Shown one piece after another: positions 15,091 through 60,877 of a stretch of 64,000 bases of DNA. Where the stretch lies: the IMG/VR virus record IMGVR_UViG_3300044644_001125, positions 1 through 64,000 of that record; one strand, given 5' to 3'. Position numbers and translations under genes: made by a program. Positions within the stretch are counted from its first letter, which is position 1. Every line of letters begins with the position of its first letter. Under the pieces are notes generated by a model. It searched no databases and was not told the origin of the DNA. It was given only the letters and a program-made list of their open reading frames with translations.

Positions 15091-15106
15091 TAATGTCTTA
15101 ATTCCA

Positions 15107-15136: not shown

Positions 15137-15182
15137 TGCCTATTAGTTCCTAAATACACCATTAGTGGAGAGGGAAACTAAC

Positions 15183-44793: not shown

Positions 44794-44899
44794 ATATTTA
44801 TGAACGGTTTTCATTATCTTTTAGCTAAATACCTAGTCTAAAAGATGATTTTCTCAAGGTGGTTTTCATTATCTTTTAGATAAATACAATATATGAAGT

Positions 44900-44974
44900 G
44901 CCGGTGTAGCTCAGTAGTAGAGCAGCTGTCTAGTAAACAGCAGGTCATGTGTGCAATCCACATTACCGGCTCCA
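44900..44974 (+). tRNA. tRNA-Thr (anticodon AGT), CCA encoded
   Basis: Acceptor GCCGGTG/TACCGGC, D stem GCTC/GAGC, anticodon stem GCTGT/ACAGC with loop CT-AGT-AA, T stem ATGTG/CACAT, ends TCCA. Confidence 0.9.
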
Positions 44975-46563: not shown

Positions 46564-48060
46564 ATGAAAGCATTTGACGTAAGTAAATTTCGTAAAACAT
46601 TAACCAAGTCTATCGAAGGTCTTGGTGTTGGTTTCAATGACCCAACTGATTGGATTAGTTGTGGTAACTATGCACTTAACTATTTGATTAGTGGTGATTT
46701 CAATAAAGGTATTCCATTAGGTAAGGTTACAGTCTTTGCCGGGGAATCTGGTTGCTTACCAGCATTGGCTAAGGTCGATGTCAAGTACACAATTGATGAT
46801 GTTGAGGTTGCTGAAACGGTGACAGTTTCTAAACTTCGTGAATTGGTTCATGATTCAGCTGTTGAAAAATTAAAAATTTCAACACCAGATGATTATCAAC
46901 TCGTTGGCCAGTGGTTCGACAAAGGGTCATTAGCTGTTGTTCGTATTTCAACTGCTACTAGAAGTGCAGAATCAGCAACAAGCCACTTGTATCAGTTGGA
47001 AGATGGTGAATGGGTTGCTGCTGGAGCATTGACCATCGGTGATTCGGTGATGACAGTTGATGGTGCTGAAGAAATCGTTAGTAAAGAATTCTTGGCAGAT
47101 GCTGAGTGTTACGATTTCGAGGTGTTACATCCAAACCACCGTTATTGGAGTGATGGTTTCTCAAGTCACAACAGTGGAAAGTCATATATTTGTTCAGGTA
47201 ACATTGTTAAAAATGCACAGGAACAAGGTATCTTTGTTGTATTGATTGATACAGAAAACGCGTTGGATGAGGCATGGCTTCATGCGTTGGGTGTTGATAC
47301 GGCTGAAGATAAACTTATGCGTTTAAGTATGTCGATGATTGATGACGTAGCTAAGACTATTTCTGAATTCATGAAAGAAATTAAAGGAATGGATGAAGCA
47401 GATAGACCTAAAGTCCTGTTTGTAATTGACTCACTTGGTATGCTACTAACGCCAGTTGACGTGAACCAATTCGATAGTGGTGATCTCAAAGGTGATATGG
47501 GTCGTAAACCAAAAGCATTAATGGCATTAGTTCGTAATAGTGTTAATTTGTTTGGTAATTATAACGTCGGTATGGTGTGTACTAACCACACATATGACTC
47601 TCAAGACCCCTACAATCCTGATCCGCGTATAAGTGGGGGTTCGGGTTTTGTGTTTGCTTCAAGTATTGTTGTGGCAATGAAGAAGCTGAAACTAAAAGAG
47701 GATGAAGACGGTGCAAAAACCAAAACTGTCCAGGGTATTCGTTCTGGTTGTAAGATCATGAAAACTCGTTACGCTCAACCATTCACTGACATCGAAGTTC
47801 AAATTCCATACAATGAAGGTATGAGTTTATATAGCGGCATGTTTAGCTTACTGGAAGGTAAGAATCTTATAACTAAGGATGGAAATAGATACTGCTACGT
47901 TGATACTGCTGGAGTTACACATAAGTATTTCCGTAAAGAGTGGAATCGCAATGAGAATGGCATTTTGGATTTAGTTATCTCGGAATTTGCCAAAAAAGTT
48001 GAAGCAGTAGAAGTTGCTGCAGAATTGGCAGATGATTTTATTGAAGAGGATCTCGATTAG
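46564..48060 (+). CDS. uvsX: RecA-like recombinase UvsX with mini-intein
   Basis: ATG at 46564 after AGGAG; GIPLGKVTVFAGESG|SGKS Walker A; LIDTENALD, VLFVIDSLG, GDMGRK, KTRY. Confidence 0.93.
   Translation: MKAFDVSKFRKTLTKSIEGLGVGFNDPTDWISCGNYALNYLISGDFNKGIPLGKVTVFAGESGCLPALAKVDVKYTIDDVEVAETVTVSKLRELVHDSAVEKLKISTPDDYQLVGQWFDKGSLAVVRISTATRSAESATSHLYQLEDGEWVAAGALTIGDSVMTVDGAEEIVSKEFLADAECYDFEVLHPNHRYWSDGFSSHNSGKSYICSGNIVKNAQEQGIFVVLIDTENALDEAWLHALGVDTAEDKLMRLSMSMIDDVAKTISEFMKEIKGMDEADRPKVLFVIDSLGMLLTPVDVNQFDSGDLKGDMGRKPKALMALVRNSVNLFGNYNVGMVCTNHTYDSQDPYNPDPRISGGSGFVFASSIVVAMKKLKLKEDEDGAKTKTVQGIRSGCKIMKTRYAQPFTDIEVQIPYNEGMSLYSGMFSLLEGKNLITKDGNRYCYVDTAGVTHKYFRKEWNRNENGILDLVISEFAKKVEAVEVAAELADDFIEEDLD
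46753..47172 (+). mobile_element. Mini-intein (140 aa) in the UvsX Walker A
   Basis: Starts CLPA, block F CYDFEV, ends SSHN followed by Ser; no endonuclease domain. Confidence 0.9.
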
Positions 48061-48874: not shown

Positions 48875-48899
48875 AAGCCCACTCTCGAGTGGGCTTTTT
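48875..48899 (+). terminator. Rho-independent terminator
   Basis: AAGCCCACT-CTCG-AGTGGGCTTTTT. Confidence 0.85.
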
Positions 48900-48948
48900 G
48901 TTACCTACAAATTTCAATAAATATAGGAAAAACTACGAGGTTACATCC

Positions 48949-49632
48949 ATGAGAATAACAGATATCATCGGCGAATCAGCAATCGATGAAGCACCACTCC
49001 CACCAGATTGGGATAAATCGGTATACACACCAAAAACATCATACAAGAAAAGAATTGAATATGCGGTAGCACGTGCCCAAAAGATGGGTAAAGGATCATC
49101 GAGAACTGCTTTTGATATTGAATACGAAGGTAGACCAACTGTTCTTAAAGTTGCGCATAATGTAAAAGGAATGGCACAGAACAAAGAAGAAGCAGAAATA
49201 CTAGATGATGGTTATGTGCAAGATTTGGGAATTACTATCCCAATTATCGATTATGATGAAGAGCATGATGAACCGGTTTGGATTCATACAGAAAAAGCAC
49301 AGAAAGCTACTGAAAAACAATTGTGCAACTTGATGAAATGTGGTACTTTACGTTTATTGGTTGCTATGGCATTTGCTAGTACTGGTAAGAAAGGTGGAAC
49401 CTTAAGTCACGAAGAAGTTATTCGTGAGTTGAAATCAGACCGCTTTAAGTACACAGACGAAGATGTTGAGTTGTGTGAAGAATATGCACAGGCATTAACT
49501 GAACTTGCAGTTAATTTTGATGTAGGTTTATGGGATTTTGTAAGAACAGCCAACTGGGGTTTATTTAATGGTAAACCTGTTGTAATTGATGTTGGTTATA
49601 CTGATGCAGTTCACGCGGCACACTATCGATGA
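48949..49632 (+). CDS. Protein-kinase-like fold protein, possibly virion-packaged
   Basis: ATG at 48949 after ATAAATA (48917-48923); GKGSSRTAF, VLKVA, QNKEE, DFVRTANWG, PVVIDVG. Confidence 0.6.
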   Translation: MRITDIIGESAIDEAPLPPDWDKSVYTPKTSYKKRIEYAVARAQKMGKGSSRTAFDIEYEGRPTVLKVAHNVKGMAQNKEEAEILDDGYVQDLGITIPIIDYDEEHDEPVWIHTEKAQKATEKQLCNLMKCGTLRLLVAMAFASTGKKGGTLSHEEVIRELKSDRFKYTDEDVELCEEYAQALTELAVNFDVGLWDFVRTANWGLFNGKPVVIDVGYTDAVHAAHYR

Positions 49633-50366
49633 ATACAATAGTAATAGTAACTGGTGGCTTTGATCCGATTCATTCTGGTCACATAGAATACTTGAAGGCT
49701 GCGAAGTCATTAGGTGATATTCTTGTTGTTGGTGTGAATAGTGATGAATGGCTTGTTCGTAAGAAAGGTCAGGCTTTCATGCCACTTGACGAGCGGGTAT
49801 CTATCATTCAGAATCTAAAGATGGTTGATGATTGTATTGTATTTGATGATACGAATGGTGATGCAATTGATGCTATCAATCGAGTCAAAAATTTATACCC
49901 AGATAACCGGTATATCTTTGCTAACGGTGGTGATAGAACGGCTAGTAATATCCCAGAGATGTCAGTCAAAAATGTAGAATTTGCATTTGGTGTTGGTGGT
50001 ACTAATAAAAAGAATTCAAGTTCATGGATATTAACTGAGTGGAAATCACCCAAGACCGAAAGACCATGGGGATATTATCGAGTATTGCATGATGTTCCTG
50101 GAATAAAAGTTAAAGAATTAACAGTAAATCCCCAGTCATCATTATCAATGCAACGACATGAATCTCGGTCTGAGTATTGGATGGTAGCTGAAGGTACGGC
50201 AACTGTTACTAGTTCTGATTCGATTTCTACATTGGTTACACATGATGAATATCACGTACCTGAGCATACTTGGCATCAATTGAGTAATATCACAGATAGA
50301 CCACTAAGAATAATTGAAATACAATACGGTGAAAGTTGTGTTGAAGAGGATATTGAAAGAAAATGA
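49629..50366 (+). CDS. Cytidylyltransferase (RfaE-II/TagD-like) fused to a type II mannose-6-phosphate-isomerase-like cupin
   Basis: TGGFDPIHSGH HxGH motif, ANGGDRT; RPWGYYRVL, LSMQRH..RSEYW, IIEIQYG. Confidence 0.88.
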   Translation: MNTIVIVTGGFDPIHSGHIEYLKAAKSLGDILVVGVNSDEWLVRKKGQAFMPLDERVSIIQNLKMVDDCIVFDDTNGDAIDAINRVKNLYPDNRYIFANGGDRTASNIPEMSVKNVEFAFGVGGTNKKNSSSWILTEWKSPKTERPWGYYRVLHDVPGIKVKELTVNPQSSLSMQRHESRSEYWMVAEGTATVTSSDSISTLVTHDEYHVPEHTWHQLSNITDRPLRIIEIQYGESCVEEDIERK

Positions 50367-51046
50367 TTACAGTATTCATTGGGTATGATCCACGAGAAGC
50401 AATAGCTTATCATGTATGTGCTAATAGTATTATTAGGCATAGTTCAAAGCCAGTTGCATTAGTTCCATTGGCTTTAGATAATCTAAAAGATTATGCAGAA
50501 ACGCACGACGATGGTAGTAATCAATTCATTTATAGTCGATTCTTAGTTCCTAGTTTAATGGATTATGAAGGATGGGCAATCTTTATCGATGGTGATATGT
50601 TACTACGTGAAGATATTGCTAAACTCTGGGAGTTGCGAGATCCGACAAAAGCAGTTCAATGCGTTCATCATAATTATGAAACTAAGATGACTACCAAGTA
50701 CTTGGGTTCAGTTAATCAAAATTATCCACGTAAGAATTGGTCTAGTGTGGTAATGTGGAATTGTGCACATCCAGCCAATGCTGTATTAACCTCTGGTTTA
50801 ATACAAGCCTCCTCTGGTGCATTTTTACATCGTTTTACTTGGTTAACTGATGATTTGATTGGTGAATTGCCAGTTGAATGGAATTGGTTACCTGATGAAT
50901 TTGGTGCTAATCCTGATGCTAAACTTCTACACTATACACTTGGAACGCCTTGTTTCCATGATTTTGCACTAACTCCAATGGCAGACGAATGGCACAGAGA
51001 AAGAATGTTAACAAACTACTCGACTCAAGTAAATGCAATTTCTTAG
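50363..51046 (+). CDS. GT-A fold glycosyltransferase (GT8-like)
   Basis: IFIGYD.RE, FIYSRFLVP, DGDML, RKNWSSV, LP.EWNWL, LLHYT.G.P. Confidence 0.85.
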   Translation: MITVFIGYDPREAIAYHVCANSIIRHSSKPVALVPLALDNLKDYAETHDDGSNQFIYSRFLVPSLMDYEGWAIFIDGDMLLREDIAKLWELRDPTKAVQCVHHNYETKMTTKYLGSVNQNYPRKNWSSVVMWNCAHPANAVLTSGLIQASSGAFLHRFTWLTDDLIGELPVEWNWLPDEFGANPDAKLLHYTLGTPCFHDFALTPMADEWHRERMLTNYSTQVNAIS

Positions 51047-51815
51047 TAAGAATCTTCAAGATGAGTACGTGGGTATGCTTGCGACTAGCCATAATCATGA
51101 TGTGGTTGGATATCATGTTTTTGATTACGATGCTAGTACAGACCCTCTTGTCATCCGAGGTATTCTCAAACATAAACTTATCAAGCGTTGTTGGGCGGAT
51201 AATCGCGATTTCTACTACATAGATAGTGGGTATTTTGGAAATAGCAAGTATAATAAGAATCCATTGGGTAATAAGTTATATCATCGAATTGTAAAGAATG
51301 ATTTGCAACATGGTGCTGTAGTTGAAAGACCTGCGGATCGATGGTTGAAACTAGGATTGACACTTTCTAATTGGCGAAATACTGGTAGAAATATACTAGT
51401 TGCTGCACCGGATGAAAAGCCTTGTAAGTTTTATGGCGTCGATAAAGATACTTGGATTGCTGAAACAGTTGCTACTATTAAACAACATACGGATAGACCA
51501 GTGGTTGTTCGGGATAGAGCAAAGTTACGCAGTGAGAGAATAACAAATACTTTACAAGAAGCGTTATCAGATACGTTTGCATTAGTTACGTTTAATAGCG
51601 TAGCAGCCACTGAAGCAATTATGTATGGAATACCGGCATTTACCTTAGTGAACAATGCGGCTAGTCCAGTTTCATTACAAGATTTAAGCAAAATAGAAAC
51701 ACCTTATTATCCAACTATGGATGAACGTTACGCATGGGCTTGTCACTTAGCCTATGGTCAATTTCACGTCACTGAACTAAAAGATGGTTCAGCCCTACGA
51801 ATTTTAGAAATATGA
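51033..51815 (+). CDS. Capsule-polysaccharide-biosynthesis-like (KpsS/KpsC-type) transferase
   Basis: YYIDSGYF, VVVR, LVTFNS.AA.EA...GIP, W...LAY.QF. Confidence 0.6.
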   Translation: MQFLSKNLQDEYVGMLATSHNHDVVGYHVFDYDASTDPLVIRGILKHKLIKRCWADNRDFYYIDSGYFGNSKYNKNPLGNKLYHRIVKNDLQHGAVVERPADRWLKLGLTLSNWRNTGRNILVAAPDEKPCKFYGVDKDTWIAETVATIKQHTDRPVVVRDRAKLRSERITNTLQEALSDTFALVTFNSVAATEAIMYGIPAFTLVNNAASPVSLQDLSKIETPYYPTMDERYAWACHLAYGQFHVTELKDGSALRILEI

Positions 51816-52798
51816 AGATATTAGTTAGTATTGCATCTGGTGCAAATAATACTGAACGTAATGTATTGCGTTCATTCTATGAAGGTATTGAACGGTATTA
51901 CTTTCAGTTATTTGCGGTTAATAATCAACGCATGTTGAAAAAACAGCATGGTATTGATTTGCGGATGAGTTACGATACTGAAATAGAATCGTGTGATATT
52001 GCTGTGCAGTTTGGTACGGTTAAACCTAGATCAGCCGAACATCATGTAACACGGCAAAGTATTCAAAAGAAGGCTGAACAAGTAATCTATATTGAAACTC
52101 CACTATTGGGTAGAACTATTGTAGAAGGTAGTAAACATCAATATTATCGAGTTGGTATCAATGGATTTATGAATAATGATGGTATATTCTACGGTGATTC
52201 AATTGATAAAACTCGTTTACCAGAAATGCGCAACCATCTTACTATCCCAGAATTTGCTGGTTGGAAAGATCATTCGGTGGGTAATATATTGGTGTTGCTG
52301 CAATTACCAGGCGATGCAAGTTTACGTGGCCAAAAGATGAGTGAGTGGCTATTAGAAACTCTATCATCTATAAGAGAAATAACCAATAGACCAATCGTAG
52401 TTCGATTTCACCCAGCAATGAGTGTTAAAGGTCGTGCTGAATTTTATAGTGAAATTGGCGATGTGTTATTCAAGAATTATCAAAATATAACTTGGTCTAA
52501 TGGATTAGATCGAAGTTTACAGGAGGAGTTATCGGATGCTGGAGTTTGCGTTACATATACCAGTGGATCAGCAATTGATGCAGTGCTGGCAGGAGTACCC
52601 GTTATTGCAATGGATGAAGGAAACATGGGATATCCAATTTCAAGTCATCGTATTAGTGAATTGTTAAATCCAAAGAAAGTGGGTAAACTTGAAATAAACC
52701 GATGGGTTGCTCAGTTAGCAAATAGTCAATGGTCTGAATCTGAGATGATTGAATCTAAAGTTTGGCAGCATTTGTTGCCACTGATTGGTGATTTGTGA
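51812..52798 (+). CDS. Capsule-polysaccharide-biosynthesis-like transferase
   Basis: LLQLPGDASL, IVVRFHP, VTYTSGSAIDAVLAGVP, LA.SQW. Confidence 0.65.
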   Translation: MKILVSIASGANNTERNVLRSFYEGIERYYFQLFAVNNQRMLKKQHGIDLRMSYDTEIESCDIAVQFGTVKPRSAEHHVTRQSIQKKAEQVIYIETPLLGRTIVEGSKHQYYRVGINGFMNNDGIFYGDSIDKTRLPEMRNHLTIPEFAGWKDHSVGNILVLLQLPGDASLRGQKMSEWLLETLSSIREITNRPIVVRFHPAMSVKGRAEFYSEIGDVLFKNYQNITWSNGLDRSLQEELSDAGVCVTYTSGSAIDAVLAGVPVIAMDEGNMGYPISSHRISELLNPKKVGKLEINRWVAQLANSQWSESEMIESKVWQHLLPLIGDL

Positions 52799-53712
52799 AA
52801 GTAGCAATCTATCATAGGTCAGTTCCTAATGCCAAGAACCAAGAGAAAGTTGATTTATTAAATCACTTTGCTACTGGAGTTGCGCGTAATGGTGATGCGG
52901 TTATTAATGTAAATGATTTGATGTATCAATCCACTGATGTTGGTGTTATACAAGGTTGGGTTAGTAATGATATTAAAAGACCTCATTTGAGATTGCGAAA
53001 TACCGTAGTTGAAGAACAAATCAAATCTGGTAAGTATGCGGTTGCAGTTGATAGCAACTTGTTTCTTTATAACGATACTACAAATGCGTTACATTATTTA
53101 AGATATAGTTTTAACGGTATATTTCCAAACACAGGAATCTACTGCGATTCTGTGATAGATCCTACTAGATGGCAGAAGATAAGTAAGAACTTAAACTTAA
53201 GTCTAAAAGATAATAGAACTACCGGTAATCATATCTTAATTTGCATGCAACGGAATGGTGGTTGGAGCATGGGTGGTGCGGATGTTCAAGATTGGGCTAT
53301 TTCTACAATAAATGAATTAAGAAAGTACACCGATAGACCAATTGTTATTAGACCACATCCAGGTGATAAAGCAACGAAGGAGTTGCTTAATTCTACAAAT
53401 GCAACGAATAAGTTGCGTGGTTTGACTATCAGTGGCAATCCAAATCTAAAAGATGATTTAATCAATTGTTGGGCAGTGGTGAATTGCAATTCTAGTCCAG
53501 TAGTTGGTGCTGCTATTGAGGGATTCCCTATCTTCGTTACTGACCCTGATAAAAGTCAATGTAGAGAAGTAGCAAACTTGAGTTTATCTGATATAGAAAA
53601 CCCATTACTACCAGATAGGCAGCAATGGGTTGAAAGACTATCCATGTTTCACTGGAACTTTGATGAGTTAAAGTCTGGTGAATGTTGGGCTCATATGCGT
53701 AGTTTTATTTGA
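52795..53712 (+). CDS. Capsule-polysaccharide-biosynthesis-like transferase
   Basis: GTG start; ILICMQ, IVIRPHPG, VVN.NSSP.V.AAIEG.P, L..FHW. Confidence 0.65.
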   Translation: MKVAIYHRSVPNAKNQEKVDLLNHFATGVARNGDAVINVNDLMYQSTDVGVIQGWVSNDIKRPHLRLRNTVVEEQIKSGKYAVAVDSNLFLYNDTTNALHYLRYSFNGIFPNTGIYCDSVIDPTRWQKISKNLNLSLKDNRTTGNHILICMQRNGGWSMGGADVQDWAISTINELRKYTDRPIVIRPHPGDKATKELLNSTNATNKLRGLTISGNPNLKDDLINCWAVVNCNSSPVVGAAIEGFPIFVTDPDKSQCREVANLSLSDIENPLLPDRQQWVERLSMFHWNFDELKSGECWAHMRSFI

Positions 53713-54364
53713 AATTTTCGATAAACTTCTGTAGTAATGCGACATCTGCATCCCGATAGTGTACGGTTTTATCCCAGATCCAATCATCTCTTTCACGCAT
53801 CCATGAATGATGATAGGTCCTATTAACCGCGTCTTTTATATTTTCAATTGGCATTTCGAAATCTGCGATCAAGTGAAATCTACCAAGTGACATTGCAACT
53901 TCACGGATCCAGGTGTCAACGTACCAGTGATAAAACACGGGTGGTAAGAAATAACCAACCGTGTTAATCCAGTTTTTATGTAAGCAAAAATGTGGGTTCT
54001 TTTTCTTACCAACTGATGGAGCTCTTGGATATATACATGCGATTTTATCTGGGTATTGGTTAAATGCATTGATTACTTTTAAACCCCAATTGGCACAATC
54101 AAATTGAGCATCATCACCAACTAAGAATAATATATCATGTGTAGCTTTTTCAGCCATCAAGTTCCAACTATAGCAGGTGCTTTGATTTGGACCAATTATA
54201 TATTGCGTTACATTCAAGAATGAAAGATAATCTTGTAGTAATGGGTCGTCTGCGTTCAAATAAAACTTGATATCTACTTCACAACCAGCAGATTTAAACG
54301 CGGAATCCATCATACGTTTTGCTAATTCTGGTCTACTTCTACTAGGTGTTAAGATGCTAATCAT
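53705..54364 (-). CDS. GT2-family glycosyltransferase
   Basis: ISILTPSRSRP, ADD, LFLVGDD, HWYVDTWI; start set by ATGA overlap. Confidence 0.75.
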   Translation of the reverse strand: MISILTPSRSRPELAKRMMDSAFKSAGCEVDIKFYLNADDPLLQDYLSFLNVTQYIIGPNQSTCYSWNLMAEKATHDILFLVGDDAQFDCANWGLKVINAFNQYPDKIACIYPRAPSVGKKKNPHFCLHKNWINTVGYFLPPVFYHWYVDTWIREVAMSLGRFHLIADFEMPIENIKDAVNRTYHHSWMRERDDWIWDKTVHYRDADVALLQKFIENFK

Positions 54365-54924
54365 ACAGACCAATTAATTGAATTAATTTCGGCTATTAAT
54401 TCAGAATTTGCTGATAACACGCCAAGACCAGCAGAATGGGCGAATCGCATTTTTGGTAAATCTATATTATCGAACACATTCCTTACCTCCTTAAATGCAG
54501 ACGTGTCATGCATTATAATAACTGCATTTGGTGTTAAAAATTTACGCCAGGTTTGATAATCATTCATTGCTGCTTCGTATGTGTGTAAACCGTCGATATG
54601 CAAAATATCTATGGGTTTATCCCAGCCACCGGCAACATCGTTAAAAAAACCTTTAATGATTTCGATATTCCCGTATCCATTTGAGTTGATAATCGACATC
54701 ACGGTATCATACGCATCCGGGTGGTGCCCTGCATGAATATCACCTTCGAATGAGTCAATACCATAAACAGTTCCGATATTTGGATTTGCTAGGCAAAACA
54801 AACTGTACCCGTAATCGACTCCTAGATCAACGGATGTAGTTGGTTTTACTTTATTAACCAGCCATTCAGCGAACACGCGATGACCTTTCCACGCACTTGC
54901 TAGTTGTTCTATATCGTATTTCAT
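54361..54924 (-). CDS. Class I SAM-dependent methyltransferase (Methyltransf_24-like)
   Basis: VDLGVDYGYS, YGIDSF, IDILHIDGLHTYE, IIMHD. Confidence 0.85.
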   Translation of the reverse strand: MKYDIEQLASAWKGHRVFAEWLVNKVKPTTSVDLGVDYGYSLFCLANPNIGTVYGIDSFEGDIHAGHHPDAYDTVMSIINSNGYGNIEIIKGFFNDVAGGWDKPIDILHIDGLHTYEAAMNDYQTWRKFLTPNAVIIMHDTSAFKEVRNVFDNIDLPKMRFAHSAGLGVLSANSELIAEINSINWSV

Positions 54925-55610
54925 TGGTTTCCTTTGTATAATGATTTGGGGTAAGCTGATCTATAATGATCAACATTACTGTTGTGTAAGGTAACTGCAT
55001 TTGGTTTTCCAATACCAATCCAAAATTCGGCATCGTGCCGGTATGGGTAATTTTCAAAATTAAATTGCGATGCATTACTATCTGCCACTGGTAAAATGAA
55101 ACTTGGTAACTTCTGAATATATTCAGAAGTAGCCCACCAGAAATTACCAGCATAATGAGGGTATTTAGAGTTTTCCATCCAGTTTACACCGACTGTGTCA
55201 AAACCAGCATTCAAGTAAGTTACACACTGTTTCCAACAGTCAACTGTGTAGAATAGCATTAGCTCACGCCAGTCCGTTATATTCGCTGTTTTCTTTGACT
55301 TCAATTTCGATGCACCTTTGTGATGTAAATACAAAACATACGAATCCGATGTGTCGCATATCAATTTTAACTCATTTAGTGTTGGTATTTCGTATTCATA
55401 TGTATTAGTTTCTGGGTATAGAACGAGCGCATTGGGATATTCCTGCATTTTAGTTTCCACCCAGCTGAAATTTGCTTTATCATACTGGCAATATATGAAC
55501 ACTCTTGCGTGGTTGATTAGGTCAGATTCTATCACATGATTTAAAATGTCAATAGCAATGTGTTCAGAACCAGGTATATCTACTAAGTGAATGAATACAT
55601 TAAGTTCCAT
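54921..55610 (-). CDS. Putative glycosyltransferase-like protein
   Basis: VLYLH.KG, GVN, HYAGNFWWATSEYI..LP, R..AEFWIG; located in the sugar island. Confidence 0.5.
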   Translation of the reverse strand: MELNVFIHLVDIPGSEHIAIDILNHVIESDLINHARVFIYCQYDKANFSWVETKMQEYPNALVLYPETNTYEYEIPTLNELKLICDTSDSYVLYLHHKGASKLKSKKTANITDWRELMLFYTVDCWKQCVTYLNAGFDTVGVNWMENSKYPHYAGNFWWATSEYIQKLPSFILPVADSNASQFNFENYPYRHDAEFWIGIGKPNAVTLHNSNVDHYRSAYPKSLYKGNQ

Positions 55611-56445
55611 GTGGTATCCTAAGCAACTCTTCCAATGTGTATAGTTGTTTCATATGCTTTGATGGATTTGATAATACACTGTATTCAATATCCCCGGGTC
55701 GTCTATTACCAACGGATACCTTAAACTCTACAGAATTTACCATTTTAAATGTCTCTACGATTTGGTTTACACTAATTCCGATACCATGGCCTAAGTTTTC
55801 AATTTGATTTGTTGGGTTTTTTATTACTGATATTATTGAGTTGCATATTTCATTGACATGCGTGTAATCCCGAATACATGTACCATCGAATGTATTGTAA
55901 TCGTTTCCAAATATTGTAAAATTACCACTAGTTCTAGCATTCATTAATGAGTAGAATAAACCATCTGGGTTTGTCGGAGTTATACCATCACAGCCGATTA
56001 CGTTGTAAAATCTAAAAATGGTGAATTGTATGTCGTTTTCGATGCAGTGCTGTATTGATATATCTTCGGCCATTTTCTTAGAAAGTCCATATGGACTTTC
56101 TAAGTTATCAGCAGCCCCAGTAGATGCTAGAATATAATGCGATGTTTTTATATGCCGTAATATATTTAATGTACCGGACACGTTTGTTGTGTAGTATGCA
56201 ACTGGATTTATAGTACTTTCGGCCACTGATACCAAGGCGGCTAAATGTATTACGCAATCAAACTCTATACCAATCATATCAGCTTCGCACAAGGTAGTTA
56301 TATCAGCTGCGTAGAATGTATCAACTGGAATAGCTGGTTGATTTCTGTCTAAACCTGATACACTGAAACAACCAGCGGCATTCAGTAATTTGGTTAAATG
56401 TGAACCGATATACCCAGAATTACCGGTTATTAATATGCGTTTCAT
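55600..56445 (-). CDS. NAD-dependent epimerase/dehydratase (UDP-glucose 4-epimerase-like)
   Basis: ILITGNSGYIGSH, VIHLAA..SV.ES, YGLSK, FRFYNV, CIRDY.HV, RRPGD. Confidence 0.9.
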   Translation of the reverse strand: MKRILITGNSGYIGSHLTKLLNAAGCFSVSGLDRNQPAIPVDTFYAADITTLCEADMIGIEFDCVIHLAALVSVAESTINPVAYYTTNVSGTLNILRHIKTSHYILASTGAADNLESPYGLSKKMAEDISIQHCIENDIQFTIFRFYNVIGCDGITPTNPDGLFYSLMNARTSGNFTIFGNDYNTFDGTCIRDYTHVNEICNSIISVIKNPTNQIENLGHGIGISVNQIVETFKMVNSVEFKVSVGNRRPGDIEYSVLSNPSKHMKQLYTLEELLRIPHGT

Positions 56446-57413
56446 GTTGATTTTTTACCAAAGTACGCGTCTAATCCTTCATTTTTATACGAACGACCGC
56501 CACTGATTGATTTGATCGTTTCGTTTTCAAATGCATCTATTTGGCAATTTGGATTCAACCCAACCTGCTGGTATAGTGGTTCGAATCGGTTACCATAAAT
56601 ATTAAACAGTAAGTTAAGAGTCCCACCAATATACAACGCCTGTTTACCCATTTCTGATTTTATGTAGTTTCCAATAAACATGGCATACGAACCGCATGAT
56701 AGAAACGCAATATCAAACTCAATTTCTTTAATTTCAGCAACCATCCGATGGCATTCATCATGCCAATTTACTGTCGTTAGATTTAGATTATCAGCAGAAT
56801 CACCAGCATCATTATACGTGATGTTTGTGTTGTATGTTTTTAGTATAAAATTTGGGAATTTGTAATCGTAAAACAATTCATCTTTTCGGGTGAATTGGTA
56901 CTCAATACTTTTTGAAAACGGGCTTACTATTAGGATAGTTTTATTATCACCCCAGGATTTAAACGATTCCAAGAACGGTTTTACTGGTTGTACGTATTGG
57001 TTCCAGTTGAATAAAACTTTGTTTTCTGATATATATGATATAAATGGCTCGTATCTTTGGTCAAATTCTGATTTACCACGCAGCATGAATTTAAAATGTT
57101 TCTCCTGTTTACCAGCATATCCGATTAAATCGCCATTTGTATAATAGGTAATCATTGATTCCAAAAATAGCCTGAAGCAATCTTTACTATTATTAAAATC
57201 AAAATAGCCGTTTAATTCTTTAACTCTTCTGGTAGCTCTATTATACCAAGCATCGTCATGTATGATTTCGTTGTTGTTAAAATAATCACACACTAATTCA
57301 AAATCAGACCCACCAATTCTACTAATAAACATTGGGTGTGGTCTAGCCATATAGTCGGTAAAATACTTCATGATATCTGTAGTATCGTGCAGTACATTGA
57401 CTTTGTTAATCAT
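56442..57413 (-). CDS. Putative GT-D-fold-like sugar transferase
   Basis: ISRIGGSD, ILIVSPF, FDIAFLSCGSYA, ALYIGG.L.LLF.I.G.R. Confidence 0.5.
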   Translation of the reverse strand: MINKVNVLHDTTDIMKYFTDYMARPHPMFISRIGGSDFELVCDYFNNNEIIHDDAWYNRATRRVKELNGYFDFNNSKDCFRLFLESMITYYTNGDLIGYAGKQEKHFKFMLRGKSEFDQRYEPFISYISENKVLFNWNQYVQPVKPFLESFKSWGDNKTILIVSPFSKSIEYQFTRKDELFYDYKFPNFILKTYNTNITYNDAGDSADNLNLTTVNWHDECHRMVAEIKEIEFDIAFLSCGSYAMFIGNYIKSEMGKQALYIGGTLNLLFNIYGNRFEPLYQQVGLNPNCQIDAFENETIKSISGGRSYKNEGLDAYFGKKST

Positions 57414-58093
57414 TTATGCTCCCAAAAATTGGTTCGTGTCAGGCTTTTCTTGCCGTCTTTCTTTGTTAGGGCAGTACCCATAGTATAATTGTGTATTTGA
57501 ATCTTAACATGGTATTGATTAATCGCATTATCTGCTGGCAGGAATGTATTCGCATATGTTTCAATTAGTTTCTTAGCAGCATGTGGTTTGATAGCATATC
57601 CACAGCAACCGGGCATTGACGAATTCCTGTACTCAGAAGCTGCAGGTTCACTGGTTGGATCTAAAAGATAATTGATATACCGTTCACTTTTCGCTGGATG
57701 TCCCAATGCAACTACAAGTACATCATCCCATTCTACTGGGATAAACTCTCTGGTTAATACAATATCATCTTCCCATATGATAATGGGTTCATCCAACTCA
57801 ACGCATTTCTTCCATAGGTTATAGTGACTGAAGAAACAGCCTTTGACACCAGGTGAACTCATTTTAGAAACTGCTTTGGAATCTACATCATCTGTATCTA
57901 TCGGGCCTTTAATACCAAATGGGTGTAAAGTTCTTCCTTCTTGTTCCATTTGCAATACCGCATCATTACCATAAGTACCTTCGAATAGTTCAACTGTTGC
58001 TCCAAAAGATTCTAAATTATCTTTTAGGTTAGTAGCTGTTTCCAAAGAAGCTGGAATCTTTGATAGATGGATGATATAGTTGTTCATTGCCAA
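57410..58093 (-). CDS. GT25-family glycosyltransferase
   Basis: YIIHL, GCFFSHYNLWKKC, IIWEDD, GYAIKP.AAKKL, LPAD. Confidence 0.85.
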   Translation of the reverse strand: MAMNNYIIHLSKIPASLETATNLKDNLESFGATVELFEGTYGNDAVLQMEQEGRTLHPFGIKGPIDTDDVDSKAVSKMSSPGVKGCFFSHYNLWKKCVELDEPIIIWEDDIVLTREFIPVEWDDVLVVALGHPAKSERYINYLLDPTSEPAASEYRNSSMPGCCGYAIKPHAAKKLIETYANTFLPADNAINQYHVKIQIHNYTMGTALTKKDGKKSLTRTNFWEHK

Positions 58094-58887
58094 TAAGCCT
58101 CGGTTCTTGGAACTTTCAAATCAGATAAATTGCTACGGGCTGCTTGCTTTCTATCACCTTTCAAGTGGTCTAAGTACGCACCCCATTCACTGTTAATCAA
58201 TGGATGACCTTCACCAGCAATCAAATGACTACTCCAATCTAATTCATTCAAGTCAAATAGCTTTCTAACTGCATCGAATACATAACTATCATGCCATTCT
58301 TCTAATGTGAAAATACCATTCTCAGCATCATCATAATAACGTTGGAACTTAGCTAAGAATCGACGAACCTTTTCACTCTTTAAATTCATGGCATATAAGC
58401 CACATTCGGTGTACTTTCCTTTACGACCTAAGAAACAAATGTCTTTATTAGGTGGACATAATCTTTCGATTTCAGCCATCGTAATTGGACTATGGCAAAT
58501 CGTGTCAGCATCCATCCAAATTAACATATCTGCTTTAGAACGACTGGCGCAGTGAAATATACTGTAAACCTTGTGAGCGAAGCGAACTGCATCCCATTTG
58601 AAACCAACCTTTTGTGTTTTATCTGGGTGCTTCTGAGTTGAATCTTCACACCAACCAGTAGCCATTGGAATATCTTTCCACTTGTCTTTAAATGCCATTA
58701 ACTCTGGTACATTTACTAGGTTGAATAAACTGGCATTGTCAACATGTTCAATATTAGGCTTGCAATTCTCTGGGTATAGTTGTAAAGTGACCTCTTTAGG
58801 CCAGTTCTCATTGAATGAATCGATCATTCGTTGAGCATACGTGGTCAAACCTTTTTGATTAAATGTTGTTACTACAGTGACTTTCAT
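58084..58887 (-). CDS. Nucleotide-diphospho-sugar transferase (GT-A fold)
   Basis: VTTFN, WDAVRFAHKVY, IWMDAD, WHDSYVFD, DHLKG. Confidence 0.75.
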   Translation of the reverse strand: MKVTVVTTFNQKGLTTYAQRMIDSFNENWPKEVTLQLYPENCKPNIEHVDNASLFNLVNVPELMAFKDKWKDIPMATGWCEDSTQKHPDKTQKVGFKWDAVRFAHKVYSIFHCASRSKADMLIWMDADTICHSPITMAEIERLCPPNKDICFLGRKGKYTECGLYAMNLKSEKVRRFLAKFQRYYDDAENGIFTLEEWHDSYVFDAVRKLFDLNELDWSSHLIAGEGHPLINSEWGAYLDHLKGDRKQAARSNLSDLKVPRTEAYWQ

Positions 58888-58901
58888 ATTTTCTCTATTC
58901 G

Positions 58902-58917
58902 TTAAATAACTATTTAG
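58902..58917. promoter_or_regulatory. Overlapping divergent late-type promoters
   Basis: TTAAATA on plus (58902-58908) and CTAAATA on minus (58917-58911) between divergent sugar genes. Confidence 0.6.
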
Positions 58918-58928
58918 TGAGGTTTACA

Positions 58929-59753
58929 ATGCGATTTCGGTTATATAGAGAGTTCGGTGCAATGAATAGCGGTCCAGTATTCGATGCGTTTGAACAAGGA
59001 TTACTGGCATTAGGCCATAGCGTAGTAGACGAAGATTCCGATGTTGATGTTATCTGGTCAGTTCTATGGAAAGGCAGAATGGCTCCGAATGCTGGAATAT
59101 ATGAATCAGCTAAAGTTACCAATAAACCAATTGTCATACTAGAAATTGGAAGCCTAATACGTGGAACTACATGGAAAGTTTCGCTGAATCACATGAATGC
59201 GCTAGGGTTCTACGGCCATGAAACTGATTTGGATGAAAACAGACCAGCTAAGTTAGGACTGGCACTAAAAGATAATGCAACCAGAAAACCTGAAATTCTA
59301 CTTGCATTGCAACATCAAGATAGTTTACAATGGCAACATCAAATGCCAACGGTTGACTGGATTGAACAAACCATCGCAGTAATCAGACAATATACCGATA
59401 GAACTGTAGTAGTAAGACCGCATCCTAGGTCAATTATATATGTACCAATTAGAAAAGATGTTCACTGTGAACGTCCAAACCGAGTTACTGGAACTTACGA
59501 TAGCTACGATATAGATTACAATTATCATTGTGTAGTTAACCACAATAGTGGTCCTTCTATACAAGCCGCTATTCATGGAACACCTGTTATTTGTGATAGT
59601 ACTAGTCTGGCATACCCAGTAAGTTCACCGATGAAAACAGTACACAACCCAGTATTACCCGATAGAGAAGATTGGTTTTTAAAATTAACACATACGGAAT
59701 GGACTTTAGATGAAATTACCACTGGCCTACCTTTAAAAAGACTACTTATATGA
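58929..59753 (+). CDS. Capsule-polysaccharide-biosynthesis-like transferase
   Basis: ILL.LQH..SLQW, VVVRPHPR, VVNHNSGP.IQAAI.G.P, L...EW. Confidence 0.62.
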   Translation: MRFRLYREFGAMNSGPVFDAFEQGLLALGHSVVDEDSDVDVIWSVLWKGRMAPNAGIYESAKVTNKPIVILEIGSLIRGTTWKVSLNHMNALGFYGHETDLDENRPAKLGLALKDNATRKPEILLALQHQDSLQWQHQMPTVDWIEQTIAVIRQYTDRTVVVRPHPRSIIYVPIRKDVHCERPNRVTGTYDSYDIDYNYHCVVNHNSGPSIQAAIHGTPVICDSTSLAYPVSSPMKTVHNPVLPDREDWFLKLTHTEWTLDEITTGLPLKRLLI

Positions 59754-60877
59754 TACCTTATATTGAAGACGTATACCCATTATTCTACGGATTAGTTGAG
59801 AAATTTGATCCATCAGTTGCAACCGCAGCTAAACAATTTAAAACAATGTGTCAGGATGGTAAACAATTCACCGACAAACAAGCCGGTTATTTGTTATCCA
59901 TAATGTCTAGTCACAAACATCAAGTACCAGTTGACTTATCTCCGGTACTTGACAACCCTAGTTGGAAATTATCTTTTAGACAAATAGATACCGGTAAACG
60001 GGTCTGGATTACAGATAATCGAGTACATATACAATTTCCGTTTAGTATCAAAGCCAACTTCGAATCTGAATTTGATGATGAATCTACTAGTTGGAATTCC
60101 GAGTTACGATATCGCACAGGTAGTCTATTTGATATTAATGTCATACAGTTATACGATTTTGCATTAAGACATGGTTTTGAAATAGACCCGTCATTTGAAA
60201 CTATTGCGTTTGAAACCGAAGATTGCCTAGCTGAAGAAAAGCAAGCATCTCCGCATAGTGTGGTTATCGATAAGCAAGTATATTTGGTTAACTCAACCGA
60301 AGAAACCGATACTTGGTTTGATTCACATAAAACCGGTAATCGACTTCAAGACCTATTCTTAGCAAAACACATGGGATATTTGTATGCTGGTAGACCAAGA
60401 AACTTAGTAGAACGCATCGCTTCATTACCTGAAAATGCTTTTTGGTTAACAGATATCGATAGATTCTTGGTACTTTGCCACCATATACAAGGTAAAGTGT
60501 GTATTGTACTAGATAGAGCAAGCAACAATTATTATTGGTTACAAGATTTCATCGAAGAAGTTAAACGCTCACCTATTTCAATGGACGAGGTTAAGTATGG
60601 GTCTGCGGTAAAAGGTAACAATCCACTCAATGATATAGTCATTGAATATGGGTTGAATAAGAATGTACGTTCTGGAAAAATCATAATAAGTATCTACAGA
60701 CCGAATAATTGGTTGATAGATCAATCAGAAAATGTTATGATGCTAGTTACAAACAACATATACCCGTCAACAAATGTAGTAACCAGAGAATGGCTAGATT
60801 CGCATCCTTGTGTTATTCATTTAAGCGAATATAAACCAACAATCCACCACTGGAGTAAGAACCTTGTCAAACTGTAA
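59750..60877 (+). CDS. Hypothetical protein upstream of uvsW
   Basis: 375 aa ORF coupled by overlaps to both neighbours. Confidence 0.6.
   Translation: MIPYIEDVYPLFYGLVEKFDPSVATAAKQFKTMCQDGKQFTDKQAGYLLSIMSSHKHQVPVDLSPVLDNPSWKLSFRQIDTGKRVWITDNRVHIQFPFSIKANFESEFDDESTSWNSELRYRTGSLFDINVIQLYDFALRHGFEIDPSFETIAFETEDCLAEEKQASPHSVVIDKQVYLVNSTEETDTWFDSHKTGNRLQDLFLAKHMGYLYAGRPRNLVERIASLPENAFWLTDIDRFLVLCHHIQGKVCIVLDRASNNYYWLQDFIEEVKRSPISMDEVKYGSAVKGNNPLNDIVIEYGLNKNVRSGKIIISIYRPNNWLIDQSENVMMLVTNNIYPSTNVVTREWLDSHPCVIHLSEYKPTIHHWSKNLVKL

What the first reader, a model, noticed from the sequence alone, without database searches (positions are those of the whole stretch)
49629..59753. Twelve-gene glycan-synthesis island under late-type promoters
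The island holds four KpsS/KpsC-like paralogues, GT8-, GT2-, GT25- and other GT-like enzymes, a methyltransferase, an epimerase and a nucleotidyltransferase-cupin fusion, arranged as tightly overlapped convergent/divergent operons. The visible promoters (48917, 58902, 58911) are late type, which favours building a complex methylated glycan on virion proteins (the fibres are Ser/Thr-rich) or late host-surface remodelling over DNA modification. Virion glycosylation is documented in some mycobacteriophages with far fewer enzymes.
Basis: partly seen in the sequence, partly recalled or inferred. Interest (0 to 1): 0.68.

Follow-up and report, generated by a model that had tools for sequence, protein, structure and literature searches.

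The report
Late-expressed glycan-building island in a lake jumbo phage
A 327-kb freshwater phage carries about 13 sugar-handling genes behind late-type promoters; a conserved core sits beside a swappable gene cassette, it most likely decorates virion proteins with a complex, strain-variable sugar chain, but the target is not proven.

Summary
Window 49629-59753 has 13 ORFs, not 12:
- a nucleotidyltransferase-cupin fusion
- a GT8-like enzyme
- four true paralogues whose fold matches retaining Kdo transferases (KpsC/WbbB/KrkA, Z 13-15)
- two further GT-A enzymes
- a GT-D-like and a GT25 enzyme
- a methyltransferase, a GalE-like epimerase and one unknown

Only one paralogue (g04) keeps both catalytic motifs, QXXXD and RXHP. 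The other three carry their own conserved substitutions.

I derived the phage's late-promoter word de novo as [C/A]TAAATAC. It stands before the sheath, terminase and adaptor genes. Near-consensus copies head all three island transcription units, and the word is kept at the same junctions in diverged relatives.

About 70 related viral contigs share a conserved core (g01-g05, g12, g13) between uvsX and uvsW. The g06-g11 cassette is swapped at gene boundaries even between 92-99% identical strains.

All island proteins look soluble. The genome lacks detectable ThyA-like, TET or C5-methylase genes.

The best cellular relative of g04 lies with g02 and g12 homologues in a flagellar gene cluster. That architecture is a flagellin-glycosylation island.

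- Best reading: late glycosylation of virion proteins (0.42).
- Main rival: host envelope remodelling (0.3).
- DNA modification is unlikely (0.1).

The parts
48876..48899 (+). Hairpin plus T-run terminator that closes the uvsX-side operon just before the island
   Evidence: Read directly from the sequence: a G+C-rich inverted repeat followed by TTTTT. It is kept in close relatives L004, L006 and L010.
48917..48924 (+). Late-type promoter word ATAAATAT, 24 nt before the ATG of g00
   Evidence: This variant lies upstream of genes in 5 of its 13 genome copies, against a 4.5% background. 18 of 21 distinct junctions in relatives carry TAAATA at this position.
48949..49632 (+). g00, 227 aa, first gene of the + operon; function unknown (phrog_4301); present only in the closest relatives
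49629..50366 (+). g01, nucleotidyltransferase (HxGH class) fused to a phosphomannose-isomerase-type cupin; conserved core
   Evidence: Pfam. NCBIfam: rfaE domain II 2.1e-21, GMP_PMI 4.5e-23. PDB: cytidylyltransferases ECT and TagD. The N-domain is 54% identical to cyanomyovirus proteins.
50363..51046 (+). g02, GT8-like retaining GT-A glycosyltransferase; conserved core
   Evidence: Pfam GT8 at 1.1e-5. 42-71% identical in relatives. 33% identical (E 1e-32) to a gene in a bacterial flagellar cluster.
51075..51815 (+). g03, KpsC/WbbB-like paralogue lacking Q, D and HP; its own conserved signature is P[DS]xKP[CA]K
51812..52798 (+). g04, KpsC/WbbB-like paralogue with complete QXXXD (QLPGD) and RXHP (RFHP) motifs; candidate retaining CMP-ulosonic-acid transferase
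   Evidence: Motif definition from PMC12887879.
52795..53712 (+). g05, KpsC/WbbB-like paralogue with Q and RXHP kept and the nucleophile Asp replaced by Gly (QRNGG)
   Evidence: AlphaFold2 model pLDDT 95. Fold matches. Motifs.
53705..54364 (-). g06, GT-A-like glycosyltransferase; first gene of the variable cassette by position, last in its operon
   Evidence: phrog_14945 at 1.2e-26. Weak GT2 match.
54361..54924 (-). g07, SAM-dependent methyltransferase (Methyltransf_24); variable cassette
54921..55610 (-). g08, 229 aa, no family match; variable cassette
55600..56445 (-). g09, short-chain NAD-dependent sugar epimerase, closest to GalE; variable cassette
56442..57413 (-). g10, GT-D-like glycosyltransferase (match over the C-terminal part only); variable cassette
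57410..58087 (-). g11, GT25 glycosyltransferase; variable cassette, frequent but not universal in relatives
58084..58887 (-). g12, retaining GT-A glycosyltransferase (GT6/GT8-like fold, DAD motif); conserved core and first gene of the - operon
   Evidence: Alignment. Model pLDDT 92.7. Foldseek matches BoGT6a, alpha-3GalT and glycogenin at about 1e-7.
58902..58917 (.). Two overlapping divergent late-type words: TTAAATAA (+, 19 nt before the g13 ATG) and CTAAATAG (-, 22 nt before the g12 ATG)
   Evidence: Of 26 distinct junctions in relatives, 24 carry the word towards g12 and 15 towards g13.
58929..59753 (+). g13, KpsC/WbbB-like paralogue with Q and RXHP kept and Ser at the nucleophile position (QHQDS)
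59750..60877 (+). g14, 375 aa, virus-only family of unknown function; overlaps g13 and uvsW and is probably co-transcribed with them.

Best explanation
The window is the first 64 kb of a 327-kb freshwater T4-like jumbo phage.

Expression (inferred from promoter words). Late in infection the phage transcribes three units from its own late-type promoters: g00-g05, g12-g06 and g13-g14-uvsW. A terminator upstream insulates them from the uvsX-side operon.

Products (shown by sequence and fold). The island encodes about 13 soluble cytoplasmic enzymes.

Chemistry (inferred from families).
- A conserved core builds the invariant part of an oligosaccharide.
- g01 isomerises and nucleotide-activates a sugar phosphate of heptose or mannose type.
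- g02 and g12 are retaining GT-A enzymes that would use host UDP-sugars.
- g03, g04, g05 and g13 are phage-specific relatives of retaining Kdo/pseudaminic-acid transferases.
- g04 has the complete QXXXD nucleophile and RXHP CMP-binding motifs. It probably transfers a CMP-activated ulosonic acid, such as host CMP-Kdo.

Variable part (shown). The cassette g06-g11 holds a GT-A enzyme, an O-methyltransferase, an unknown, a GalE-like epimerase, a GT-D-like enzyme and a GT25 enzyme. It would add strain-specific outer residues. It is exchanged at gene boundaries between near-identical strains.

Acceptor (inferred, the weakest step). The target is phage structural proteins made at the same time. This would parallel flagellin glycosylation and would give virions a variable glycan coat.
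For: Families and folds.

Motifs per orthologue group, over 44-60 distinct relatives each. Motif definition from PMC12887879.

Late word.
- TAAATAC has 98 copies, and 62 of them lie within 200 nt upstream of a gene on the same strand.
- It stands before the tail sheath, large terminase, head-tail adaptor and a virion protein.
- Late-type and sigma70-type sites are nearly exclusive: 71 and 86 genes, with only 5 having both. By that strict scan the first 60 kb holds late-type sites only; the looser scan does place two sigma70-like sites at 45076 and 45320, before the island.
- Island sites.
- The word is conserved at the same junctions in relatives while the flanks diverge.

No strong sigma70-like site lies inside the island, and a terminator stands before it.

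All island proteins lack transmembrane-like segments, and most are acidic to neutral (pI 5.1-6.5 for 11 of 13; g05 7.6 and g03 8.3).

Core and cassette.
- Synteny across about 70 viral contigs.
- Cassette length 0.56-5.7 kb in 56 loci.
- Nucleotide breakpoints at gene boundaries among strains with 92-99% identical flanks.
- A population joint 53704->58088 in a lake metagenome.

Protein-target analogy. In a Halieaceae MAG the order is flgG-H-I-K-L-fliD, then a g02 homologue (33%, E 1e-32), a g04-type homologue (32%, E 1e-46, QLPGDAS), a GT4, a g12-like gene (E 9e-9), methyltransferases and a GT2, with a flagellin gene 27 kb further on. Glycosylation islands beside flagellar genes are an established architecture (PMC4875605, PMC7874193). 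Ser/Thr-O-Kdo on flagellin has been reported (bioRxiv 2020.06.03.131540).

Metatranscriptome contigs lie on g11, g12 and g13.
Against: - No acceptor is identified and no initiating protein glycosyltransferase is recognised.
- GT8, GT25, heptose-type nucleotidyltransferase and Kdo-transferase-like enzymes are classic LPS-core families. Their usual acceptors are lipid-linked.
- Only one of seven cellular genomes with a family member has it next to flagellar genes. The context is known for one other, G364, where it sits in an operon that looks like glycolipid or LPS synthesis. One (G024) was not examined, and in three the neighbours were not annotated.
- The island's promoter words differ from the consensus at their last base (T, G or A instead of C).
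- Timing is predicted from sequence, not measured.
- The RNA libraries can hold DNA, and only contigs were available.
- Three paralogues lack the nucleophile Asp, so their chemistry is unknown.
- Ser/Thr richness of fibres is generic.
Confidence: 0.42

Rival explanations
1. Host-envelope remodelling. The same enzymes act at the cytoplasmic face of the inner membrane on the host's lipid A-core, a phosphatidylglycerol-linked Kdo primer or another glycolipid. The host's own transport machinery carries the altered glycolipid to the surface. The altered surface masks the receptor, which limits superinfection or the loss of progeny on debris. A variant of this reading is that the island glycosylates the host's flagellin or pilin.
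For: - The families present are those of LPS/LOS core synthesis: GT8, GT25, rfaE-domain-II-like nucleotidyltransferase, GalE-like epimerase and a Kdo-transferase-like fold.
- The solved relatives KpsC and WbbB act on lipid-linked acceptors (PMC12887879).
- A bacterial homologue (G364) sits in an operon with an AMP-binding enzyme, an aminotransferase, an ELM1-like protein, a 2OG oxygenase and two GT4 genes, away from flagellin genes.
- Similar gene sets in large cyanomyoviruses are conventionally read as host-surface modification (PMC12801897).
- Cassette swapping between near-identical strains could track strain-level LPS diversity in the host.
Against: - Late-type promoters and no sigma70-type site in the island. 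Surface remodelling for exclusion is expected early.
- No membrane protein, flippase, polymerase or ABC exporter is present.
- The core is conserved across phages whose UvsX proteins are only 61-68% identical. These phages presumably infect different hosts with different acceptors.
- The only cellular locus holding homologues of three core genes together is flagellar.
Confidence: 0.3
2. DNA hypermodification. The glycosyltransferases decorate a hydroxylated base in phage DNA with a sugar chain that protects it from nucleases.
For: - The island lies between gp32/uvsX and uvsW.
- In more distant phages a g04-like plus g12-like pair sits among RNR, ThyX, dCMP deaminase, PhoH and exonuclease genes.
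- Phage GT-B enzymes add Kdo to 5hmC. With a cytidylyltransferase they add one or two heptoses. Phage DNA GT-A enzymes resemble GT8 LPS enzymes and PBCV-1 A64R (bioRxiv 2023.12.21.572611).
- Poly-arabinosylated cytosine exists, and such group transfer can occur late (PMC13326640).
- The best PDB sequence hit of the g12 profile is A64R, but it is not significant (E 0.19).
Against: - No ThyA homologue, TET/JBP, C5 cytosine methylase, 2OG-FeII_Oxy_2 or 2OG-FeII_Oxy_3 was found in a genome estimated 92% complete. The TET search had no positive control.
- ThyX and dCMP deaminase are present, as in phages with ordinary bases.
- Nine or ten transferases are far more than any known DNA glycan needs.
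- The fold neighbours are Kdo transferases; T4 beta-glucosyltransferase is not among the matches listed.
- Most island proteins are acidic to neutral and none is strongly basic (highest pI 8.3, g03).
Confidence: 0.1
3. An auxiliary metabolic set with no defined polymer. In this reading the genes are a loose collection of horizontally acquired sugar genes sitting in a hypervariable slot next to uvsX, without a joint product.
For: - The slot beside uvsX also holds unrelated accessory genes in cyanomyoviruses.
- The cassette content varies widely between relatives.
Against: - Seven core genes keep their order and orientation across about 70 diverged contigs.
- Each paralogue group keeps its own strict active-site signature.
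- The genes overlap translationally and share promoters.
Confidence: 0.08

Closest known systems
Retaining beta-Kdo glycosyltransferases KpsC (GT107), WbbB (GT99) and KrkA (GT140), and the KpsS-like pseudaminic-acid transferase
   Same: - Modified GT-B fold: the g05 model matches them at Z 13.0-15.1 over about 250 residues.
- g04 and its orthologues have QXXXD and (K/R)XHP in register with WbbB.
- Several modules are used in series, as in KpsS plus the two KpsC modules.
   Different: - No significant sequence similarity: profile E 0.075-1.1, and no paralogue of the window matches Pfam Capsule_synth.
- Single-module proteins of about 250-330 aa.
- Three of the four paralogue groups have replaced the nucleophile Asp with Gly or Ser, or have lost all the motifs.
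- The g04-type signature is essentially viral: 87 IMG/VR contigs against 1 of 185,579 species genomes.
- No kps export genes accompany them.
Glycosyltransferase / 'LPS and cell-wall' gene clusters of large aquatic T4-like myoviruses (P-SSM2, S-SCSM1, S-SCSM2R, S-SSM7; Pelagibacter phage Mosig)
   Same: - T4-like backbone.
- Many small soluble GTs, epimerases and methyltransferases.
- A g01-type nucleotidyltransferase 54% identical, placed next to uvsX in S-SSM7.
- A g12-like gene inside a cluster of methyltransferase, GT and sulfotransferase genes beside RNR in Mosig.
- Their function is untested in every case (PMC12801897).
   Different: - The four KpsC-like paralogues were not found in any named cultured phage: one uncultured record is the only hit.
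- Here the cluster has a defined conserved core, a swappable cassette and late-type promoters.
- The genome is larger, at 327 kb.
Bacterial flagellin glycosylation islands
   Same: - Soluble cytoplasmic enzymes that decorate Ser/Thr of a self-assembling extracellular protein before assembly.
- They often use CMP-ulosonic acids.
- Conserved and variable parts.
- One such locus holds homologues of g02, g04 and g12.
   Different: - No Maf-type transferase or nonulosonic-acid synthesis genes here.
- The target would be virion proteins.
- The link rests on a single metagenome-assembled genome.
Virion glycosylation in mycobacteriophages and glycan gene clusters of chloroviruses and mimiviruses
   Same: - Virus-encoded cytoplasmic GTs decorate structural proteins.
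- The chlorovirus glycan has a conserved core with strain-specific outer residues and methylated sugars (own knowledge; mycobacteriophage work cited via PMC12619734).
   Different: - Mycobacteriophages use about two GTs.
- No sequence relationship was shown apart from a non-significant A64R hit.
- Nothing has been tested experimentally for this lineage.

Membership tests
Retaining beta-Kdo transferases (GT99/GT107/GT140 structural group) | Modified GT-B fold closest to KpsC/WbbB/KrkA | tested here: met
   g05 model, pLDDT 95. The top 15 PDB chains are all of this group (Z 13.0-15.1, rmsd 3.7-4.9 A, 237-254 residues aligned). The next folds reach Z 11 or less. Only g05 was modelled; the other three paralogues are tied to it by BLASTP.
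Retaining beta-Kdo transferases (GT99/GT107/GT140 structural group) | QXXXD motif (Gln binds the carboxylate, Asp is the nucleophile) | tested here: inconclusive
   - Met in g04 (QLPGD) and in all 56 members of its orthologue group.
- Not met in g05 (QRNGG).
- Not met in g13 (QHQDS, Ser at Q+4).
- Not met in g03 (no Gln).
Definition from PMC12887879.
Retaining beta-Kdo transferases (GT99/GT107/GT140 structural group) | (K/R)XHP CMP-binding motif | tested here: inconclusive
   Met in g04 (RFHP), g05 (RPHP) and g13 (RPHP). Not met in g03 (RDRA) or its orthologues.
Retaining beta-Kdo transferases (GT99/GT107/GT140 structural group) | Sequence membership (Pfam Capsule_synth PF05159, or a significant hit to a family member) | tested here: not met
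   No Pfam hit for any of the four paralogues even at E up to 10. One of 52 relatives hits at E 0.0028. The profile scores 0.075 against WbbB and 1.1 against KpsC.
Retaining beta-Kdo transferases (GT99/GT107/GT140 structural group) | CMP-beta-Kdo donor and retention of configuration | not testable with these tools
   Needs an enzyme assay or adduct trapping. The genome encodes no KdsB/NeuA-type synthetase, so a host-supplied donor would be required.
T4-type late transcription unit | Late promoter word at about -10 and no -35 element, upstream of structural genes | tested here: met
   [C/A]TAAATAC is enriched upstream of genes and stands before the sheath, TerL, adaptor and virion protein genes. 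It is nearly exclusive of sigma70-type sites. The island sites are one-base variants of it and are conserved in relatives.
T4-type late transcription unit | Phage late sigma factor (gp55-like) and measured late timing | not tested
   I did not search for gp55/gp33 homologues. No time-resolved RNA exists for this uncultured phage.
Group 2 capsule (kps) locus | ABC exporter KpsMT and KpsDE, with lipid-linked poly-Kdo synthesis | tested here: not met
   No island protein has a transmembrane-like segment, and no export family was found among the island proteins.
Phage DNA glycosylation pathway | An enzyme that makes a hydroxylated pyrimidine acceptor (ThyA homologue, or C5-methylase plus TET-like dioxygenase) | tested here: not met
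   The whole 327-kb record has no match to PF00303, PF12851, PF00145, PF13532 or PF13640. The PF12851 search had no positive control. The record is estimated 92% complete.
Flagellin-glycosylation-island-like protein glycosylation module | Homologues located inside a flagellar gene cluster between flgL/fliD and a flagellin gene | tested here: met
   Met in one genome, G001. Not met in four of the other six genomes that carry a family member (G364, G561, G465, G642); G024 was not checked.
Cyanomyovirus-type glycan gene cluster | Shared genes at a shared position on a T4-like backbone | tested here: met
   The g01 N-domain is 54% identical to genes of S-SSM7, P-TIM68 and S-SCSM2R, and lies next to uvsX in S-SSM7. 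A g12-like gene is present in Pelagibacter phage Mosig.

The most novel reading that the evidence does not exclude
A globally distributed lineage of freshwater jumbo phages coats its virions with a complex glycan containing ulosonic acid. The glycan is built by a phage-specific glycosyltransferase family related to Kdo and pseudaminic-acid transferases. This family has diversified into four fixed paralogues, three of which have new active-site chemistry. The outer part of the glycan is re-programmed by swapping a gene cassette, which would give virion 'serotypes' analogous to capsule or flagellin glycotypes.
Probability: 0.3. Interest if true: 0.8.

Novelty: new variant of a known kind. Interest (0 to 1): 0.6.

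Why it matters
Glycosyltransferase clusters in aquatic T4-like phages have been noted for twenty years and are labelled 'LPS genes' without any test. This island supplies testable structure:
- a defined conserved core
- a cassette that recombines at gene boundaries between near-identical strains
- predicted late timing
- a cellular counterpart in a flagellar glycosylation locus

If virion glycosylation is confirmed, protein glycosylation of phage particles would extend from actinobacteriophages to abundant environmental myoviruses. Particle 'glycotypes' would then become a new axis of phage-host and phage-grazer interaction.

The four paralogues also define a large, almost purely viral glycosyltransferase family: about 4,800 clusters at 50% identity. 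They offer natural variants at the nucleophile position of the double-displacement Kdo-transferase mechanism.

Tried and rejected
- DNA searches of the island against 50,697 phage records, both near and distant modes, found nothing.
- Pfam gave nothing for g08, g12, g13 and g14 beyond one non-significant GT2 match for g12 (E 0.046), and only sub-threshold DUF6716 hits for the paralogues.
- The four-sequence profile found no meaningful PDB hit.
- The broad alignment A2 was too diverse for the pattern-based locus finder. I used a g04-type alignment instead.
- PADLOC and NCBIfam hits for g00 (PglW, E 0.003-0.007) and g10 (Cas6, 1.7e-5, over the GT-D segment) are too weak or off-target, and I discarded them.
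- g14: no PDB sequence hit, and the Atlas returned only virus-only unnamed clusters.
- Cluster look-up returned only 'hypothetical protein', plus one 'LPS glycosyltransferase' label on a fusion protein.
- The 'moraphage' paper (PMC12619734) and the huge-phage envelope preprint do not describe this island.
One Atlas call failed as busy.
- Read laying was given 5,991 letters. Only contigs were available, so no transcript starts, strand or expression levels could be read.
- I considered a kps-like capsule locus and rejected it as a membership claim, because no exporters or membrane proteins are present.
- I did not use complex prediction. No specific enzyme-acceptor pair is well enough motivated.

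Full report
**Setting.** The window is the first 64 kb of a single 327,256-bp IMG/VR virus record. The record is linear, 38% G+C and estimated 92% complete. It is a T4-like jumbo myovirus. It encodes a gp32-like protein, UvsX and UvsW. It also has a 1158-aa tail sheath, a large terminase and a head-tail adaptor. Ribonucleotide reductase, ThyX, dCMP deaminase and PhoH are present too. The island DNA has no match among 50,697 phage records. Its 31-mers occur in lake and freshwater metagenomes of 20 studies, and its proteins have thousands of unnamed metagenomic relatives.

**Observation.** Between 49629 and 59753 there are 13 ORFs, not 12. They form a + block of five, a - block of seven and one + gene. 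Neighbours overlap by 4-14 nt, the convergent pair overlaps by 8 nt, and the divergent gap is 41 nt.

Family assignments:
- g01: an HxGH nucleotidyltransferase fused to a phosphomannose-isomerase-type cupin.
- g02: GT8, just above the Pfam cut-off.
- g06: a PHROG glycosyltransferase family.
- g07: Methyltransf_24.
- g09: a GalE-like epimerase.
- g10: GT-D-like, C-terminal part only.
- g11: GT25.
- g08: no match in any library.

**The four paralogues.** g03, g04, g05 and g13 match each other at 1e-11 to 1e-23, but no Pfam model above threshold. A profile of the four finds 4,783 cluster representatives among 1.84 billion proteins.
- An AlphaFold2 model of g05 (pLDDT 95) has KpsC, WbbB or KrkA as all of its 15 best PDB matches. 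These score Z 13.0-15.1, against 11 or less for generic GT-B folds.
- The literature defines this structural group by a QXXXD motif, where the Asp is the nucleophile, and a (K/R)XHP motif that binds CMP (PMC12887879).
- An HMM alignment puts the family's Q..GD in register with WbbB's motif.

Across 44-60 distinct orthologues per group, the signatures are strict:

| Group | Nucleophile motif | CMP-binding motif |
|---|---|---|
| g04 | QL[PA]GD | RxHP |
| g05 | QRNGG | RxHP |
| g13 | QxxxSxQ | RxHP |
| g03 | P[DS]xKP[CA]K | Rx[RK][AP] |

So 'KpsS/KpsC-like' is right for the fold. Only g04 has the full catalytic set. The other three are conserved variants of unknown chemistry.

**g12.** A 34-sequence alignment shows an invariant DAD motif. 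The model (pLDDT 92.7) matches retaining GT-A enzymes of the GT6 and GT8 families. This is not GT2.

**Promoters.** I derived the motifs from the genome itself.
- The word TAAATAC has 98 copies. Of these, 62 lie within 200 nt upstream of a same-strand gene start. By the stricter 60-nt test the strongest variants score 59-72%, against a 4.5% background.
- It precedes the sheath, terminase, adaptor and a virion protein gene.
- Late-type sites (71 genes) and sigma70-type sites (86 genes) overlap in only 5 genes. They are also spatially separate, with sigma70-type sites concentrated at 70-110 kb.

The island has three such words:
- ATAAATAT at 48917, 24 nt before the g00 ATG. It lies just after a hairpin-plus-T-run terminator at 48876-48899.
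- CTAAATAG on the - strand at 58917-58910, 22 nt before the g12 ATG.
- TTAAATAA at 58902, 19 nt before the g13 ATG.

Each is a one-base variant of the consensus. Each variant class is itself enriched at least six-fold upstream of genes. In relatives whose flanks have diverged, 24 of 26 distinct g12|g13 junctions keep the word towards g12 and 15 keep it towards g13. Before the first island gene, 18 of 21 junctions keep it. No strong sigma70-like site lies inside the island. The third unit runs on into uvsW, which is a late gene in T4 (own knowledge). Timing is therefore predicted, not measured.

**Comparative anatomy.** An IMG/VR scan with the g04-type signature returned 87 viral contigs. The same kind of scan over one genome for each of 185,579 prokaryote species returned one.
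- In about 70 of the viral contigs the order is uvsX - two small genes - g01 - g02 - g03 - g04 - g05 - [variable] - g12(-) - g13(+) - (g14) - uvsW.
- The variable stretch between g05 and g12 is 0.56-5.7 kb, median 2.1 kb, in 56 loci. It holds GT25 genes, extra GT-A or KpsC-like paralogues, epimerases, dehydratases and methyltransferases.
- Strains whose flanks are 92-99% identical to the window break off at 53716-53726, 55337, 57411-57422 and 58088. All but 55337, which lies inside g08, are gene boundaries.
- One lake metagenome holds a contig that joins 53704 to 58088, skipping exactly g06-g11.

The island is thus a conserved core plus a swappable cassette.

**Which acceptor?**
- All island proteins lack transmembrane-like segments, and most are acidic to neutral; only g03 (pI 8.3) and g05 (7.6) are mildly basic. 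No exporter, flippase or polymerase is present.
- The genome has no detectable ThyA homologue, TET/JBP, C5-methylase or 2OG oxygenase, and no KdsB/NeuA-type synthetase.
- Cellular members of the paralogue family are rare: 3 of 401 and 4 of 401 sampled genomes.

The closest cellular member is in a Halieaceae MAG. It lies directly after flgG-flgH-flgI-flgK-flgL-fliD, next to a g02 homologue (33%, E 1e-32) and a g12-like gene. A GT4, a 2OG oxygenase, an FkbM methyltransferase, a GT2 and WbqC follow, and a flagellin gene lies 27 kb further on. This is the architecture of flagellin glycosylation islands (PMC4875605, PMC7874193). O-linked Kdo on flagellin has been reported.

A second bacterial member sits in a glycolipid-like operon far from flagellin genes. 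Three more are not near flagellin genes either, and one further match (G024) was not examined.

The Ser/Thr-rich fibre-like proteins at 10.2-19.6 kb exist. Such composition is common in fibres and proves nothing.

**Rivals.**
- Host-envelope remodelling is supported by the LPS-core flavour of the families and by the conventional reading of cyanophage clusters (PMC12801897).
- DNA glycosylation has precedents with Kdo and heptose (bioRxiv 2023.12.21.572611) and with poly-arabinose (PMC13326640). The island does sit among replication genes. Against this, the acceptor-forming enzymes are missing and the number of transferases is excessive.

**Known relatives.** The g01 N-domain is 54% identical to genes of the cyanomyoviruses S-SSM7, P-TIM68 and S-SCSM2R. 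In S-SSM7 that gene lies next to uvsX. A g12-like gene lies in a small cluster of methyltransferase, GT and sulfotransferase genes in Pelagibacter phage Mosig. The KpsC-like paralogues hit only one uncultured phage record.

**Expression in nature.** Two metatranscriptome runs of one sample hold short contigs on g11, g12, g13 and the g05/g06 junction. One of them ends 6 nt upstream of the g12 ATG. DNA carry-over cannot be excluded, and contigs give no strand or expression level.

**Verdict.** I rank the readings as follows:
- virion-protein glycosylation: 0.42
- host-envelope remodelling: 0.30
- DNA modification: 0.10
- no joint pathway: 0.08

The kind of feature, a glycan gene cluster in an aquatic T4-like phage, is known. 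New here are the viral KpsC-like family with its fixed active-site variants, the core-plus-cassette organisation, the late-type promoters and the flagellar-island counterpart.

Noticed in passing
window 46564-48060: UvsX is 498 aa against 352 aa in a relative. About 140 extra residues sit inside the Walker-A loop (GESG | C...| SGKS). The insert begins with Cys and is followed by Ser, which looks like a mini-intein.
   Followed up: partly
G000:C1:192825-195401 (outside the window): The ribonucleotide reductase large subunit carries Intein_splicing and HINT domains. This would be a second intein in the genome.
   Followed up: no
G000:C1 about 75,000-100,300, minus strand: At least 21 small genes are each preceded by a near-identical cassette, CCCACCTTAACAAAGCACTACGGAGTAAA, then 8 nt, then ATG. 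This is a repeated early-region leader with a ribosome-binding element, and the region is also rich in sigma70-type promoters.
   Followed up: partly
window 22711; G000:C1 125813, 173790, 185562, 186419, 326716: Many late-type words lie only 3-5 nt before the ATG. The expected transcript start then falls on or next to the start codon, so these may be leaderless late mRNAs. The same is seen before g01 in several relatives.
   Followed up: no
window 44815-44890 and 32596; elsewhere in the genome: The word TTATCTTTTAG, or its complement, recurs directly beside late-type words, twice in front of tRNA-Thr(AGT) at 44900-44974. Its meaning is unknown.
   Followed up: no
window 10189-19613: A run of fibre-like proteins with 23-34% Ser+Thr and repeated GTLPVANGGTG-type units. 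The 1476-aa protein follows a consensus late word.
   Followed up: partly
G000:C1:190171-191694: A 507-aa protein with a pectate-lyase-like domain and an Mtd_N domain, behind a consensus late word. It is probably a polysaccharide-degrading tail spike, which implies a host with a surface polysaccharide.
   Followed up: no
window 55167 (minus strand), inside g08: A perfect consensus late word, CTAAATAC, lies inside the g08 coding sequence, 236 nt upstream of g07. It may be an internal promoter or a chance copy.
   Followed up: no
L009, L038, L067 (relatives lacking g13): Where g13 is absent, g14 is preceded by a sigma70-like TTGAC/TTGAT-N17-TAnnAT site, while g12 keeps its late-type word. The timing of g14/uvsW may therefore differ between relatives.
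   Followed up: no
L001 2440-4625 (278-kb relative): This relative has a haem-oxygenase-like gene (HamA_HO-like) and a radical-SAM gene between gp32 and uvsX. Both are absent at that place in the window.
   Followed up: no
L099 and L100 (bacterial loci): In both bacterial loci with strong family members, a 2OG-Fe(II) oxygenase of the prolyl-hydroxylase type lies two to three genes from the KpsC-like gene. It may hydroxylate the acceptor or the sugar.
   Followed up: no
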